A DNA stretch of 64,000 nucleotides from Vicugna vicugna (Eukaryota), in NCBI GenBank assembly GCA_013265495.1, contig MU060970.1, forward strand, positions 10,369,063 through 10,433,062, written 5' to 3'. A model generated the notes under the pieces. That model searched no databases. It was given only the letters and a program-made list of their open reading frames with translations, and was not told the DNA's origin. A program made the translations under genes and the position numbers. This document shows, in pieces, positions 22,416 to 51,113 of the stretch; positions within the stretch are counted from its first letter, which is position 1, and each line of letters starts with the position of its first letter.

Positions 22416-22841
22416 GTCTGGTGACAGCATTCAAGGTCGCCACGCCATATTCCCTGTACGTGTGTCCCGAGGGGCAGAATGTCACTCTCACCTGCAGACT
22501 CTTGGGCCCCATGGCCAAAGGGCACGAAGTGACCTTCTACAAGACCTGGTACCGCAGCTCGCGGGGCGAGGTGCAGGTCTGCTCGGAGCGCCGCCCTATC
22601 CGTAACCTCACATTCCAGGACCTTCACCTGCACCACAGTGGCCACCAGGCCAACTCCAGTCAAGATCTGGCACAGAGCCACGGGCTGGAGTCAGCCTCGG
22701 ACCATCACGGCAACTTCACCATTACCATGCGCAACCTGACCTTGCTGGACGGCGGCCTCTACTGCTGCCTGGTGGTGGAGATCAGGCACCACCACTCAGA
22801 GCAGCGGGTCTATGGAGCCATGGAGCTGCAGGTGCAGAGAG
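22416..22841 (+). CDS. VSIR: VSIR exon 2, IgV domain ([27 protein letters not shown]...[27 protein letters not shown])
   Basis: gagcag|GTCTG...AGAG|gtgagg; ORF 22421..22978; VISTA-specific Cys pattern and His clusters. Confidence 0.98.
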
Positions 22842-23135
22842 GTGAGGGCTTCCTCTGCAGGACAGCTGGGAGGTGTTGTTCCTGTGGGTGTGGTTCTGTG
22901 CTGGACTGGAAGGGTGAGCAGAGAGAAGGACAGTGTGACTGTTGGGGGTGGCGCTGCTACTACAGGGTGAGTGAATGAGATGGGGTGGGATGCTGTCTCA
23001 GTCTCTCTGGTTAGCTCGTTGTGATGGAGAGGAAGGGTGTAGGTGGCTCTATTTATGATGGTGGGACTTTTAAATGGGAGAGGGTATATGATCCTGGGCT
23101 GGGAGTGTGACTGCTCATGACAGTTCCACAGCAGC

Positions 23136-46847: not shown

Positions 46848-46997
46848 CTGCCCATTGCTGCCAGCGTCGGGGTCCCGGGCCTTGACGGTGGCCACGTGCT
46901 GGCCCACAGGGTAGTCCTCGGGCACACTGACCGCTGAGTCAGAGGTGAAGTCGAACCGGGGACTATTGTCATTCTCGTCCAGGACAGTGATGTAGAC
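46848..46997 (-). CDS. CDH23: CDH23 exon 35 equivalent, VYITVLDENDNSPRFDFTSDSAVSVPEDYPVGQHVATVKARDPDAGSNGQ, 150 nt
   Basis: ccccag|GTCTAC...GGGCAG|gtgggc; DENDN, PED and DPD motifs; missed by the ORF track in this frame. Confidence 0.97.
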
Positions 46998-47344
46998 CTG
47001 GGGATGAACACAGCCAGAGAACTCCCACCTCCTTCCCCTCCCTGGCCCCAGTCACAGGGTCTCACCATGGGCCCGGTGGAGACCAGACCTCCAGTCCATT
47101 CCAGAAGGTCAGCAAGCTTTCAGAGCCCACCTAGGCCAATCCTGATTTTACTCGGAGGCCCGAACACATTACTTCTGGGAGTCTAGTCGGGGAGGGCTGC
47201 ACACACTCAAATGCTGGGGGGCTGAGGAGGGGTGACTCAGAGGTGGTAGGGACTTGGAGAACCAGAAGGCACGGGCCCTGGCTAAAGGGAACAGAGGCTA
47301 CTCAGCTCCAAACTGGGGAGGGAGTGCCAGCATGGCATTGGCAT

Positions 47345-47478
47345 AGCTTCCAGGTTTTCAAAAGGAATTAGGAATCCAGACTTTTATGTGGAATTAGGTG
47401 TTGATTAATAAAACTTTAAAAAAAAATCATGTGCAGGCCAGTTAAAACACATCTGGCAGCCAGATATTGCCCGAAAGC
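47345..47478 (+). mobile_element. hAT-type MITE relic
   Basis: ttttcaaaaggaattaggaatccagacttttatgtg...gcaggccagttaaaacacatctggcagccagat. Confidence 0.55.
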
Positions 47479-48049
47479 CACTTTGTCCACACCTCTGGAT
47501 TAGAGGGAAGGAAATAGGGCTCAGGAGCAGGAGGGAGCCATGAGGTGACTTGGTGGTCCCAGCAGGGAAAGGGCAGATGGGGAAGGGAGGGAAATTTCCA
47601 ACTACCAGATAAAGAGGGAACATGCAAGCTGCATGTGAAGAGCATGTTGGTTTGTGTCTGCAGCTTGGGCTTCTGCTGCAGGGTCTGGATGGTAAGCCTG
47701 GAGAGAAGGCCTCCAGCTCATGGACGGCCACAGGTACCCCTTAGGTTCACTGATGAGGGGATGAAAATGGGGCAGAAGAGGCTCAGATTTTAGGAACCCC
47801 AGGCCAGGTCTCCCCTGACCCCTTCTCAGGCCAGACCCCATCTTCTCCTTCCCCAGGCCTGGGCCTCCAGGGCTCACAGGCCCATCTGCCTCCTAGTGTG
47901 CACAGGATCCCATGGGGAGCCTTGGGAACCTCACCACATTGCAGAGAAAATTCCATTTCATCCTCTCTCCTAATCAGGTCTTCCCTCTTCTTGGTCCTAG
48001 ACATGCTCCCGCATCTTAGGCAGCTGTCGGGACCGTACGCAACGAGCCC

Positions 48050-48200
48050 AGGCTTTGCAGCAGGACTGATTCCACCACTTACTAGCTCTGTGATTTGGCA
48101 AAAGTTACTCAACCTCTTTGATGTTCCATTTCCTCAGATGAAAGTAGGAACAAGAACACCTACGGCATCAAGATGCTGGAAGGAATAAATGAGCCAACAA
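48050..48200 (+). mobile_element. MIR
   Basis: ccaccacttactagctctgtgatttggcaaaagttactcaacctct...tttcctcagatgaaagtagg. Confidence 0.75.
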
Positions 48201-48394
48201 AAGTGGTCCCCATCCTGCTTCTGGCCTGGCTAAGAACTGCCCATGTATCATTTTGGATTTTGTTCAGGGAGCTCTGTGACGTCCCAGAGCCCTAGTCTGC
48301 TCTCCTGTGAAATGGGCATAATAATGTCTACCACGCTGTTCTCAGGGTGAAAACAAACAAGGCCCCTATCATCTGATCCCTCCCAAAATCTGTC

Positions 48395-48725
48395 ACTCGG
48401 GTCAAGGCCTTATATGGACTCCCCATGCTTCCTCCTACCACAAGGCCTCTGCACATGCTGTTCCCTCTTGCATAAAATGCTCTTCCTTTTTGGCTGTGCA
48501 AACTCCTATATTTTCTGGGGATCTCAGCTTGAGTCACTTCCTCAGGGAAACCCTCCTCGATTTCCCTGACATCTCATTATAGGCTCTCTCTTGGCATCTA
48601 GTGTGATAATCTGATCAATGTCTTTTCTGTTTGTGAAGGCAGAGGCTGCATCTGGTTTTGGTTTCCTGCCATATGTCCCCTGAGCCCAGCTCAGAGTCGG
48701 GCACATGGTAGGTACTCCCTCTATG
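48395..48725 (+). mobile_element. LINE-2 fragment
   Basis: ctctgcacatgctgttccctcttgcataaaatgctcttcc...gtgaaggcagaggc...gggcacatggtaggtactc. Confidence 0.7.
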
Positions 48726-50690
48726 CTACTACTCTCATCATGATCATGATGATGTTTGTGACATGCTCCCAGCACTAGGGAGTCTGCATCAGTGAGTGAG
48801 GAGGGAGGGCAGGTACCAAGGCCTGTGGGAATTAGCTAAGGGTCTGTGGCCCCACCCAGGGCCTCGTGGTCCAAATCACCTCCCCCATCAGGCAAAGGCC
48901 CCAGCGTGTTACTCAGAGCTCTTACGGCAGAGTCCCCCCTTCCACCAGCCCAGCCTGCCCCCTTCCTGCTGTCTCCCCACCCCTCTCAGGGCCACGGAGC
49001 TGCTGGGACTGGGAGGAGTCAGGTGTAGGTGAGCTGTGGTTTAGGGGTTCCGGCCTCACAGAGGAAATGGTGGCACCTTTAAAAGGTCCCTCAGCCTGCC
49101 TCCACCCCAGCACCTCCAACAAATTTGGAGCTAACAGAGCTGGTGTATCTGGGGCAGTGGCTCCTGGGAGCCTCTGAGAGGAAGCCGTCGGGTGGGTCCT
49201 GCTTCCTGGAAGAGGGTGAGGGACTGTGGAAACACAGGGGCCCTCCCAAGAGTATGTACTCTAAAATGCCCTCACTTGCCCAAGCAGGGGAAGGGGCCAA
49301 GGCTTCCACGGCCTCGGGAGGAGCGTTCCTCCTGCTTCTTGGGCTCCTCTTGGCTTCAGCTCCTGGACTCAGGACAAGGGTGAGGGGCAGCTGGGCCCAC
49401 TTTACAGATGAGGCTCAGTGAGAGGGCCTTCTGAAACTTAGATCCTCTGGCTGAGAAGGGCAGGAGCCCCAGCTGGGAGCTGCAGGACATGTGGCACCTG
49501 CTCACCATCTGCCCCCCGAGGGCTCTGCTCACTGGCTGCCCTCTGGGATCCCCAGGGAGCTGAGGGCAGCTGGGTGGGCTCACTGCTGCTTGTAGCCTCA
49601 CTCACCCCAGGCTGGCCCCATGGACGGAGGAGGCTTTTGGGTACAGCCAAGCCACAATCAGGGCCACTGGCACTGGGCACTTCTAGGGAGCCGTGCGGCA
49701 GAGGATGCTCTTTGCCTAGACACCGGGTTGGTCTGTACCCTTTGGCTAAGGTGAAAGGGACTCGGTGGGGGTGAAATTTGGCTATAACCAATGTTGATGA
49801 TGAGCTAGAAACCCTACATGGTCTACAGATGGCCTCAGGATTGTCCGGCTGGGGCCCAAGCTGAATCGTGGTTAAAAGTTCTCATTATCATGGCAGAATG
49901 CCACCCCATAAGCAGCCCCTGGGGCCCAACCCCTAGCCTGAGGTCACCACCTCTCTTATTCTTCTAGGAATCTTGCCTGGTATCTCCGACCTCAGCAGTC
50001 ACCCTTCCCAAAATGCATAAGGTCTTGGTGCCTTTACTTAGGGTCCTTGAGGGCAGTGACTCACACCGAGTGCCCACCGCTGCCCTTACCCAGCACTCCC
50101 CAGGCCCTGACCAGTGCCCCATTTCACACGACTTACTATAACACACTCCTTACACTGATCCCGAGAGAGGCAAGGGGTACCCTTTACAGATGCTACTCCT
50201 ATCACCCCTTCCTACAAAGGGTTTCCAATCTGCCATTTCTGTCACATCCTCTGAGGAAGGGAGAGCAGCTGGCATGATCCCCATTTGAGACCCAAGAAAA
50301 AGAAGCACAGAGAGGTTGAGCAACTAGCCTACATTACATGGCCAGTGAGGAGCAGAGCTGGGTAAGGCTTCAGTGTTTCCTCCACTGTTTGTTCCACGTA
50401 CTCCTTGTTAGTGCACCATTCACCCCAGGATCCCATGAGGGGCTCGGCAGGACATGCAGGGTAGAGAGAACAGAGCTGGATGTGGGGTACATGTCCAGGA
50501 GGGGCCTGGACTCAGGTGTGAGAGTGTATGGACTGGAGAGTTTGGGAAGGGTCTGAGCAGGGACCAGCTCCTGGCCTGCCATGTGCCCTCTCCCCAGGAG
50601 AGGCAGGAAGGCTCAGCACCATGCAGAGCCCAAGCCAGCACTGGCCACAGACAGTGCTCAGGGGAGAGCCCTGGTCCACAGACTACTCAC

Positions 50691-50693
50691 CTT
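50691..50693 (-). CDS. CDH23: CDH23 3-nt microexon (AAG = Lys), human exon 34 equivalent
   Basis: Minus strand reads ...tgctaaccaccttctttgccttttctctccctcggccgcttcctgccactctgcctacag|AAG|gtgagtag: branch-point CTAAC, long pyrimidine tract, CAG acceptor and consensus GTGAGT donor. Gives DSTV-K-VYITV between two phase-0 exons. Confidence 0.88.
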
Positions 50694-51011
50694 CTGTAGG
50701 CAGAGTGGCAGGAAGCGGCCGAGGGAGAGAAAAGGCAAAGAAGGTGGTTAGCAGTTCCAGCCCAGCACCCACTCCAAGCAGTGGTCTGCTGAGGATGCCA
50801 TCCTGCCCCACCACCTGTCTGAGGTCTCCTCCCTGGTCCAGGCTGCCAGGGAAGGTGTGGCATGGTTGGCCACAGTGCCATCCCTGGGCTACTGAAACCC
50901 TCACCCACTGCCTGGCCTGCATGTTGGGTGGCTGGTGAAGTTGTGGGTTTGGGGGCCATTGGGGCAGTGATGGGCTGTCCCTGTGGGGCTCTCACCTGGG
51001 GATCTACTCAC

Positions 51012-51113
51012 CACAGTGGAGTCTACTTTGGGGCCGCCGTCATCTGCCACCACTGTCAAGGTGTAGAAGTCACCTTTCTCCCTGTCCACCTGGCCCTTGA
51101 CTGTGATCACGCC
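51012..51113 (-). CDS. CDH23: CDH23 exon 33 equivalent, GVITVKGQVDREKGDFYTLTVVADDGGPKVDSTV, 102 nt
   Basis: ctgcag|GGCGTG...ACTGTG|gtgagt; DRE motif; overlaps ORF 50901..51110. Confidence 0.97.

What the first reader, a model, noticed from the sequence alone, without database searches (positions are those of the whole stretch)
50691..50755. 3-nucleotide CDH23 microexon with SRRM3/4-type regulatory architecture
Seen: cctacag|AAG|gtgagt with a near-consensus branch point (TGCTAAC, branch A about 54 nt upstream), a long pyrimidine tract, and two UGC motifs 7-9 and 15-17 nt before the acceptor. Flanking exons are phase 0, so skipping deletes one Lys (DSTV-K-VYITV) in the last beta-strand of EC13, just before the DENDN linker. 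Established: UGC motifs at this position mark SRRM4/nSR100-dependent microexons, and Srrm4 loss causes hair-cell defects and deafness in mice. I recall the exon being annotated in human (c.4207-4209), so the exon is probably known. Inference: regulated inclusion would shift strand register and could switch tip-link mechanics between sensory and non-sensory CDH23; I do not know this to have been shown.
Basis: partly seen in the sequence, partly recalled or inferred. Interest (0 to 1): 0.75.

Follow-up and report, generated by a model that had tools for sequence, protein, structure and literature searches.

The report
Known 3-base CDH23 exon, conserved
The three bases AAG at 50693-50691 are a real, already annotated and deeply conserved exon of the deafness gene CDH23 that adds one lysine, but nothing shows that its use is switched between tissues.

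Summary
On the minus strand, cctacag|AAG|gtgagt lies between a 102-nt exon ending DSTV (51113-51012) and a 150-nt exon starting VYITV (46997-46848), both in phase 0.

- **The exon is real.** Solved CDH23 structures 5wj8 and 7u71 contain DSTVKVYITV. No two-exon join can produce the Lys. Seven other vertebrate loci (two mammals, a bird, a bird- or reptile-like contig, three fishes) all carry ag|AAG|gt at the same place.
- **It is known.** A review lists CDH23 microexons of 6 and 3 bp. A 2026 variant paper places an exon end at c.4209 of NM_022124.6.
- **The flanking signals are partly conserved.** A UGC at -18 to -14 and an AG-free stretch of 63-80 nt occur in all five amniotes. The -9 to -7 UGC is specific to this species.
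- **Regulated inclusion is untested, and some evidence points the other way.** The donor is the only full MAG|GTRAGT match among the window's 13 donors. The branch point is near consensus. Every listed mammalian RefSeq isoform keeps the Lys, while the 6-nt microexon does vary. With the Lys, the strand has the canonical cadherin length.

Verdict: a known exon with an interesting but unproven SRRM3/4 hypothesis.

The parts
51012..51113 (-). Upstream CDH23 exon, 102 nt, phase 0/0, encoding GVITVKGQVDREKGDFYTLTVVADDGGPKVDSTV (strand F and F-G loop of the cadherin repeat)
   Evidence: It aligns to residues 63-96 of PDB chains 7u71 and 5wj8. Boundaries were resolved.
50694..51011 (-). Short upstream intron (318 nt), gtgagt ... 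cctacag
   Evidence: The orthologous intron is 291 nt in Otolemur, 308 in Mustela, 533 in Mimus, 304 in eel and 132 in the Logan fish contig.
50747..50753 (-). Branch-point motif TGCTAAC, with branch A at 50748 (-55 from the exon)
   Evidence: CTAAC is conserved at -58 in Otolemur, -56 in Mustela and -50 in Mimus. No AG occurs for 78 nt upstream of the exon.
50721..50744 (-). CU-rich tract ccttctttgccttttctctccctc, including UCUCUC
   Evidence: The core CCTTTTC(T/C)CT is conserved in the three mammals.
50708..50710 (-). UGC at -17 to -15, between the CU tract and the acceptor
   Evidence: A UGC lies at -18 to -14 in all five amniote loci.
50700..50702 (-). UGC at -9 to -7, specific to this species
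   Evidence: The aligned position is UGA in Otolemur and Mustela.
50691..50693 (-). 3-nt exon AAG encoding Lys (Lys1403 in the 3354-aa isoform numbering)
   Evidence: PDB chains 5wj8 and 7u71 read DSTVKVYITV; no two-exon join gives the Lys; ag|AAG|gt is present in all seven orthologous loci.
50685..50690 (-). Donor gtgagt. With the exon it reads AAG|GTGAGT, the only donor of 13 in the window that matches all nine positions of MAG|GTRAGT
   Evidence: donor column.
46998..50690 (-). Downstream intron, 3693 nt
46848..46997 (-). Downstream CDH23 exon, 150 nt, encoding VYITVLDENDNSPRF...SNGQ (rest of strand G, the DENDN calcium linker and the start of the next repeat)
   Evidence: It aligns to residues 98-147 of 7u71 and 5wj8.

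Best explanation
This is the annotated 3-nt coding exon of CDH23. In human NM_022124.6 the exon ends at c.4209 and encodes Lys1403. It has been kept as AAG since at least the common ancestor of teleosts and mammals.

The Lys is the fourth residue of the last beta-strand of a cadherin repeat (EC13 by position). With the Lys, the stretch between GP and DxNDN has the canonical 13-residue length.

An exon of 3 nt cannot hold U2AF/U2 and U1 at the same time, so I infer that it is spliced in order:
1. The short upstream intron (318 nt) is removed by intron definition. It has a near-consensus distal branch point (TGCTAAC at -55), a CU tract and a YAG acceptor.
2. That joins AAG to the 102-nt upstream exon.
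3. The resulting 105-nt exon ends in a full-consensus donor (AAG|GTGAGT), which pairs with the acceptor 3.7 kb downstream.

Inclusion is the default wherever the gene matters. SRRM3/4 may help through the conserved UGC at about -17, but a tissue switch is not shown and is not needed to explain the sequence.
For: - **The exon is real.** The flanking exons align to PDB chain residues 63-96 and 98-147, one residue apart. The chains read DSTVKVYITV. A two-exon join gives only DSTVVYITV.
- **The exon is known.** PMC8268283 states 69 exons plus microexons of 6 and 3 bp. PMC13510221 reports c.4209+794 as intronic and p.1404 as the start of the next exon.
- **It is conserved.** 51 vertebrate protein models carry the Lys, and ag|AAG|gt is present in seven other loci from mammal to teleost.
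- **The core signals are strong.** It has the only 9/9 donor in the window. CTAAC is conserved. The AG-free zone is the longest of the window's 14 acceptors.
- **Strong donors can make microexons SRRM4-independent.** Minigene data in PMC13174390 show this.
- **Isoform records keep the Lys.** Cat, fox and guinea-pig RefSeq isoforms vary by NL (the 6-nt microexon), a 5-aa insert and exon 68, but never by this Lys.
- **The strand position fits.** The AlphaFold model (pLDDT 86) places the Lys in strand 96-105, before DENDN.
Against: - No transcript data could be examined, so constitutive inclusion is inferred and not observed.
- 49 of about 100 public CDH23 models lack the Lys. Real skipping would produce the same models, although annotation failure on a 3-nt exon is the simpler reading. 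Otolemur and eel models lack the Lys even though their DNA has an intact microexon.
- The conserved UGC and the extended branch-point-to-acceptor region are exactly what SRRM4-dependent microexons show.
- The order of intron removal is inferred from steric arguments and from other microexons, not from this gene.
Confidence: 0.62

Rival explanations
1. Inclusion of the exon depends on the eMIC-domain factors SRRM4 or SRRM3. These would bind the UGC at about -17, between the CU tract and the acceptor, and recruit early spliceosome components. Hair cells and photoreceptors, which express these factors, would include the Lys. Other cells, or Srrm3/4 mutants, would skip it and make CDH23 with a strand one residue shorter.
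For: - A UGC lies at -26 to -14 in 7 of 8 loci, against 3 of 15 neighbouring acceptors in the same loci. Fisher p = 0.006, but the species are not independent.
- A UGC lies at -18 to -14 in all five amniotes.
- The AG-free zone is 63-80 nt in amniotes, against 12-51 nt at neighbouring acceptors. This matches the extended branch-point distance reported for neural microexons (PMC12871342).
- The position of the UGC at the 3' end of the pyrimidine tract is as described for Srrm4 targets in the inner ear (PMC3464207).
Against: - Cdh23 is not among the Srrm4-dependent exons in the text or held supplements of PMC3464207. That study's method (comparison of exon composition between bv and control mice) may not have resolved a 3-nt exon; this is my inference and was not checked.
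- No paper combining CDH23 with microexon terms reports regulation of this exon.
- The donor is a full consensus, and such donors made test microexons SRRM4-independent.
- UGC is also present upstream of about half of the longer neural exons used as the comparison set, so it is not specific.
- The eel has no UGC within 60 nt, and the second UGC is lineage-specific.
- All listed mammalian RefSeq isoforms retain the Lys.
Confidence: 0.3
2. The AAG is a chance AG-NNN-GT in an intron and not an exon. The Lys would then come from some other splice-site choice.
For: One AGAAGGT heptamer is expected about 0.25 times in 4 kb by chance (arithmetic).
Against: No alternative donor or acceptor at the flanking exons can produce a Lys codon. 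The same ag|AAG|gt is present in seven other vertebrate loci, including a 226-nt interval. The literature counts a 3-bp exon in this gene.
Confidence: 0.01

Closest known systems
Human CDH23 3-bp microexon (exon ending at c.4209 in NM_022124.6, Lys1403)
   Same: It is flanked by the same exons (DSTV and VYITV). The same residue is present in the CDH23 sequences of PDB entries 5wj8 and 7u71 (which of them is human or mouse is from my knowledge of the entries, since the tool gave only 'Cadherin-23'). The phase is the same, and the position before the DENDN linker is the same.
   Different: The species is different: an unidentified placental mammal whose exons are about 90% identical in protein to cat, fox and guinea pig. 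Human DNA was not examined here.
SRRM4/SRRM3 (eMIC)-dependent neural and sensory microexons, such as the Srrm4 targets of the Bronx waltzer inner ear and retina-enriched microexons such as the 3-nt CLTC exon
   Same: The length falls in the 3-27 nt class. There is a UGC between the pyrimidine tract and the acceptor, a UCUC-rich tract, a long branch-point-to-acceptor distance, and expression in hair cells and photoreceptors.
   Different: No evidence of tissue-dependent inclusion or of dependence on the factors. The donor is a full consensus rather than the non-consensus donors described for dependent microexons. The exon is not in the published target lists that could be searched.
CDH23 6-nt microexon (Asn-Leu, residues 379-380)
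   Same: It is in the same gene, is also a very short in-frame exon, and is counted in the same sentence of the review.
   Different: That exon is recorded as alternative. Cat and fox RefSeq isoforms differ by NL, and a retina long-read study reports skipping of 'micro exon 12', which I take to be this exon. No such record was found for the 3-nt exon. The 6-nt exon lies outside this window.

Membership tests
Annotated CDH23 3-nt coding exon | AG/GT-flanked 3-nt segment between the exons ending DSTV and starting VYITV, in phase 0 | tested here: met
Annotated CDH23 3-nt coding exon | The encoded residue is present in the mature protein at that junction | tested here: met
   PDB chains 5wj8 and 7u71 read DSTVKVYITV. 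51 vertebrate models carry the Lys.
Annotated CDH23 3-nt coding exon | Orthologous exon conserved in other genomes | tested here: met
   ag|AAG|gt is present in Otolemur, Mustela, Mimus, a bird- or reptile-like Logan contig, eel, a Logan fish contig and trout.
Annotated CDH23 3-nt coding exon | Described in the literature or in the reference transcript | tested here: met
   PMC8268283. PMC13510221 places the exon end at c.4209 and the next exon at p.1404.
SRRM3/4 (eMIC)-dependent microexon | Exon length of 3-27 nt | tested here: met
   The exon is 3 nt.
SRRM3/4 (eMIC)-dependent microexon | [quoted passage not shown] | tested here: met
   UGC at -17 and -9 in the window. The -18 to -14 copy is conserved in five amniotes. 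It is absent in eel.
SRRM3/4 (eMIC)-dependent microexon | Extended branch-point-to-acceptor region | tested here: met
   CTAAC at -50 to -58 in the three mammals and the bird, and an AG-free zone of 63-80 nt in all five amniotes. The reference values come from PMC12871342.
SRRM3/4 (eMIC)-dependent microexon | Weak acceptor and non-consensus donor, so that inclusion needs the factor | tested here: inconclusive
   The donor matches 9/9 of MAG|GTRAGT and is the strongest in the window, which argues against dependence. Acceptor strength could not be scored because MaxEntScan was not available.
SRRM3/4 (eMIC)-dependent microexon | Higher inclusion in neural or sensory tissue than elsewhere | not testable with these tools
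   No RNA-seq access. Mammalian RefSeq isoforms all include the Lys.
SRRM3/4 (eMIC)-dependent microexon | Inclusion lost in Srrm3/4 mutants or gained on SRRM4 expression | not testable with these tools
   Cdh23 is absent from the text and held supplements of PMC3464207. The supplements of PMC9303857 are not held.

The most novel reading that the evidence does not exclude
The Lys1403 microexon of CDH23 is an SRRM3/4-dependent exon. Its conserved UGC at about -17 and its 55-nt branch-to-acceptor spacer would be the binding platform. Srrm4-deficient hair cells and non-sensory cells would then make CDH23 lacking one residue in the last strand of EC13. That would be a previously unnoticed molecular lesion of the tip link in splicing-factor deafness.
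Probability: 0.25. Interest if true: 0.6.

Novelty: already known. Interest (0 to 1): 0.27.

Why it matters
The exon itself adds nothing new, because it is in the human reference transcript and in the solved structures. Three practical points follow from this work.

- **Annotation.** About half of public CDH23 protein models omit the Lys, or misjoin or split the gene at this point, because pipelines cannot place a 3-nt exon. Comparative and variant-interpretation work on this deafness and Usher gene should not trust those models here.
- **Variant interpretation.** The conserved elements around the exon are candidate sites for deep-intronic pathogenic variants. These are the CTAAC at about -55, the CU tract, the UGC at about -17, and the AAG that serves as both codon and donor context.
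- **A testable hypothesis.** If inclusion did depend on SRRM3/4, it would link a splicing-factor deafness model directly to the tip-link protein. The test needs only junction counts and one minigene.

Tried and rejected
- **Representative search with the 50-aa downstream exon.** The top 150 were giant cadherins ranked by summed repeat scores. Only one CDH23 (P0029, sea bream, lacking the Lys) was usable as a handle.
- **First homology search on P0029.** It was swamped by FAT4. I fixed this by querying a 1950-aa part, so that the length filter excluded FAT4.
- **Full-length CDH23 loci from compact fish genomes.** No DNA was returned because the gene spans 117-164 kb. I used fragment gene models instead.
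- **Single-sequence AlphaFold.** pLDDT was 35, so the model was discarded. I repeated the run with a 41-sequence alignment.
- **Supplement searches.** Those for PMC9303857 are not held. PMC3464207 has no Cdh23. PMC7935315 lists CDH23 only in tables of genes with numeric values, not among microexon events.
- **Lys made by an alternative donor or acceptor of the flanking exons.** Rejected, because no AAG or AAA is reachable there.
- **A second AAG candidate in the window (ag|AAG|gc, 1581 nt into the interval).** Rejected because it has a GC donor, 50% pyrimidines and no conservation.
- **Caveat on the UGC statistic.** The Fisher test treats eight loci as independent, but they represent about five lineages.

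Full report
**What is in the sequence**

The gene runs on the minus strand. Reading that strand:
- A 102-nt exon (51113-51012) follows cctgcag and ends ...GAC TCC ACT GTG | gtgagt, which translates to ...KVDSTV.
- After 318 nt comes ctgctaacc (TGCTAAC at 50753-50747, branch A at 50748).
- A CU-rich tract follows (ccttctttgccttttctctccctc), then ggccgcttccTGCcactcTGCctacag, then AAG (50693-50691), then gtgagtag.
- The next exon starts 3693 nt further on, at 46997, after tcatccccag. It reads GTC TAC ATC ACT GTC CTG GAC GAG AAT GAC AAT..., which translates to VYITVLDENDN.

The UGC motifs are at -17 to -15 and -9 to -7 from the first exon base. The branch A is 54 nt before the acceptor G. Both flanking exons are in phase 0.

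**It is CDH23, and the exon is real**

- The two flanking exons match Cadherin-23 chains in the Protein Data Bank. The upstream exon aligns to residues 63-96 of 7u71 and 5wj8, and the downstream exon to residues 98-147. Exactly one residue lies between them.
- A 30-residue peptide spanning the junction with the Lys matches both chains perfectly: ADDGGPKVDSTVKVYITVLDENDNSPRFDF.
- Against a 3354-aa cat CDH23 isoform, the window covers residues 1123-1835, and the Lys is residue 1403.
- I mapped the 14 exons in the window. When only the two flanking exons are joined, the best solution is DSTVVYITV. No alternative donor or acceptor yields a Lys.
- In the 4014-nt interval there are 25 AG-NNN-GT sites. 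The AAG site is the only Lys codon with a GT donor, and it has the best pyrimidine tract and the best donor.

**It is already known**

[quoted passage not shown] This is repeated in PMC12752033.
- A 2026 report describes a deletion named c.4209+794_4825del in NM_022124.6 that removes exons 35-38 and gives p.1404_1605del (PMC13510221). So an exon ends at c.4209, and residue 1404 starts the next exon.

**Conservation**

From a search restricted by length to exclude FAT4, I tabulated the junction in about 100 vertebrate CDH23 models.
- 51 models have the Lys. They include teleosts, a bird cluster of 282 members, snakes, lizards, amphibians (Spea and the caecilian Rhinatrema), echidna, and every listed mammalian isoform.
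- 49 models lack it. These are mostly homology-based or Ensembl-type models, plus some RefSeq fish and reptile models.

I then fetched DNA for fragment gene models. All seven loci have ag|AAG|gt between the flanking exons. The loci are Otolemur, Mustela, the bird Mimus, a bird- or reptile-like Logan contig, an eel, a Logan fish contig and rainbow trout.

Otolemur and the eel are species whose protein models lack the Lys although the microexon is intact in the DNA. The Mustela model reads into the intron. The Lys-less models are therefore best read as annotation failures. They cannot, however, exclude real skipping.

The codon is AAG in all eight loci. AAG is the only Lys codon that also satisfies the AG|GU donor context. 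The idea that this is a dual constraint is my inference.

**The flanking signals**

In the three-mammal alignment, CT(G/A)CTAAC, the CU tract, CTCTG..TACAG|AAG|GTGAGT and about 20 nt downstream are conserved.

| Feature | At the microexon | Comparison |
|---|---|---|
| UGC at -26 to -14 | 7 of 8 loci | 3 of 15 neighbouring acceptors in the same loci |
| UGC at -18 to -14 | all five amniote loci | no UGC within 60 nt in eel |
| UGC at -9 to -7 | window only | UGA in Otolemur and Mustela |
| AG-free zone upstream | 78 nt in the window; 63-80 nt in the five amniotes; 42-55 nt in fish | longest of the window's 14 acceptors; neighbouring amniote acceptors 12-51 nt |
| CTAAC | -50 to -58 in three mammals and the bird | |
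| TGC count in -20 to -3 | 2 in the window | 0-1 at the other 13 acceptors; 2.8-4.6% of background AGs reach 2 |

For the UGC comparison at -26 to -14, Fisher p = 0.006, but the loci represent only about five independent lineages.

This arrangement is what the literature describes for SRRM4-responsive exons:
- a UGC at the 3' end of the pyrimidine tract (PMC3464207; PMC9303857);
- an extended branch-point distance, with a median of 45 nt against 34 nt (PMC12871342).

So the architecture is present, and part of it is conserved. It is not specific, however. UGC is found upstream of about half of the longer neural exons in that same study.

**Evidence bearing on regulation**

Nothing found shows that this exon is ever skipped.
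- Papers that combine CDH23 with microexon terms mention only the count of exons or skipping of 'micro exon 12' in retina, which I take to be the 6-nt exon.
- Cdh23 is not in the text or held supplements of the Bronx waltzer Srrm4 study.
- Cat, fox and guinea-pig RefSeq isoforms differ by NL at 379-380 (the 6-nt microexon), by a 5-aa insert and by the 35-aa exon 68. They never differ by Lys1403.
- The donor AAG|GTGAGT is the only one of 13 donors in the window that matches all nine positions of MAG|GTRAGT.
- A 2026 preprint shows that a consensus donor, alone or together with a stronger pyrimidine tract depending on the gene, makes SRRM4-dependent microexons constitutive even in fibroblasts. 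It also shows that the upstream intron of microexons is removed first (PMC13174390).

**Structure**

- A single-sequence AlphaFold model was useless (pLDDT 35).
- With a 41-sequence alignment the model reaches pLDDT 86.
- Strand F spans residues 80-88 and the last strand spans residues 96-105 (S T V K V Y I T V L), followed by D E N D N. The Lys is the fourth residue of that strand.
- With the Lys, the stretch from P to the D of DxNDN is 13 residues. This equals the length in another CDH23 repeat (the third of chain 7u71) and in a CELSR1 repeat, both seen. Without the Lys it would be 12.
- Deleting the Lys would therefore shorten the F-G hairpin or shift the register of the first three strand residues. 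This is inference.
- The name EC13 follows from the residue number and from my knowledge of the PDB entries. The tool output gave only 'Cadherin-23'.

**Most likely mechanism**

A 3-nt exon leaves no room for simultaneous recognition of its two splice sites. The sequence suggests ordered splicing:
1. The short upstream intron is recognised across the intron, using its strong donor, the distal near-consensus branch point and a long AG-free pyrimidine-rich region.
2. Removing it turns the upstream exon plus AAG into an ordinary 105-nt exon.
3. That exon ends in a consensus donor, which is then used with the acceptor 3.7 kb away.

The signals and their conservation are shown here. The order of removal, and independence from SRRM3/4, are inferred.

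My estimates:

| Reading | Probability |
|---|---|
| Inclusion is essentially constitutive wherever CDH23 is expressed | about 0.6 |
| Inclusion needs or is boosted by SRRM3/4, with skipping elsewhere | about 0.3 |
| The AAG is not an exon | about 0.01 |

**Verdict**

Useful by-products are:
- the conservation map of the intronic elements;
- the finding that public gene models often lose this residue.

Noticed in passing
window 22421-22978 (+ strand), inside the 36.6-kb CDH23 intron (43694-7081): An open reading frame on the opposite strand matches the immunoglobulin V-set domain (Pfam PF07686, E 2.6e-08). A V-set gene is also nested on the opposite strand inside the fugu (Takifugu) CDH23 locus. 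This is probably a conserved nested VSIR-like gene. That name is from memory and was not tested.
   Followed up: partly
Protein models P0029, P0382, P0387, P0381, P0363 and 40-odd others; loci L001, L002, L004: About half of public CDH23 models lack the microexon Lys (49 of about 100). Others patch the junction with intron-derived residues (Mustela DSTVVSGTPGESPTGRVYITV; Nesospiza DSTVPCAPSQVTITV). In Mustela the CDH23 model is split into a separate 'cadherin-23-like' gene, with the rest of CDH23 called as the next gene. A separate 'cadherin-23-like' fragment model also exists in Otolemur. The DNA of Otolemur, Mustela and eel has an intact ag|AAG|gt.
   Followed up: yes
Proteins P0374 against P0364, and P0377 against P0368 (residues 379-380): Cat and fox RefSeq isoforms differ by the dipeptide NL. 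This is the signature of the 6-nt CDH23 microexon being alternatively used, in line with the skipping of 'micro exon 12' reported in human retina. That exon lies outside this window.
   Followed up: partly
window 50691-50693 and the orthologous positions in L001-L007: The Lys codon is AAG, never AAA, in all eight loci. This would be expected if the three bases must also serve as the -3 to -1 positions of the donor.
   Followed up: partly
It may belong to a nested gene. I did not examine it.
   Followed up: no
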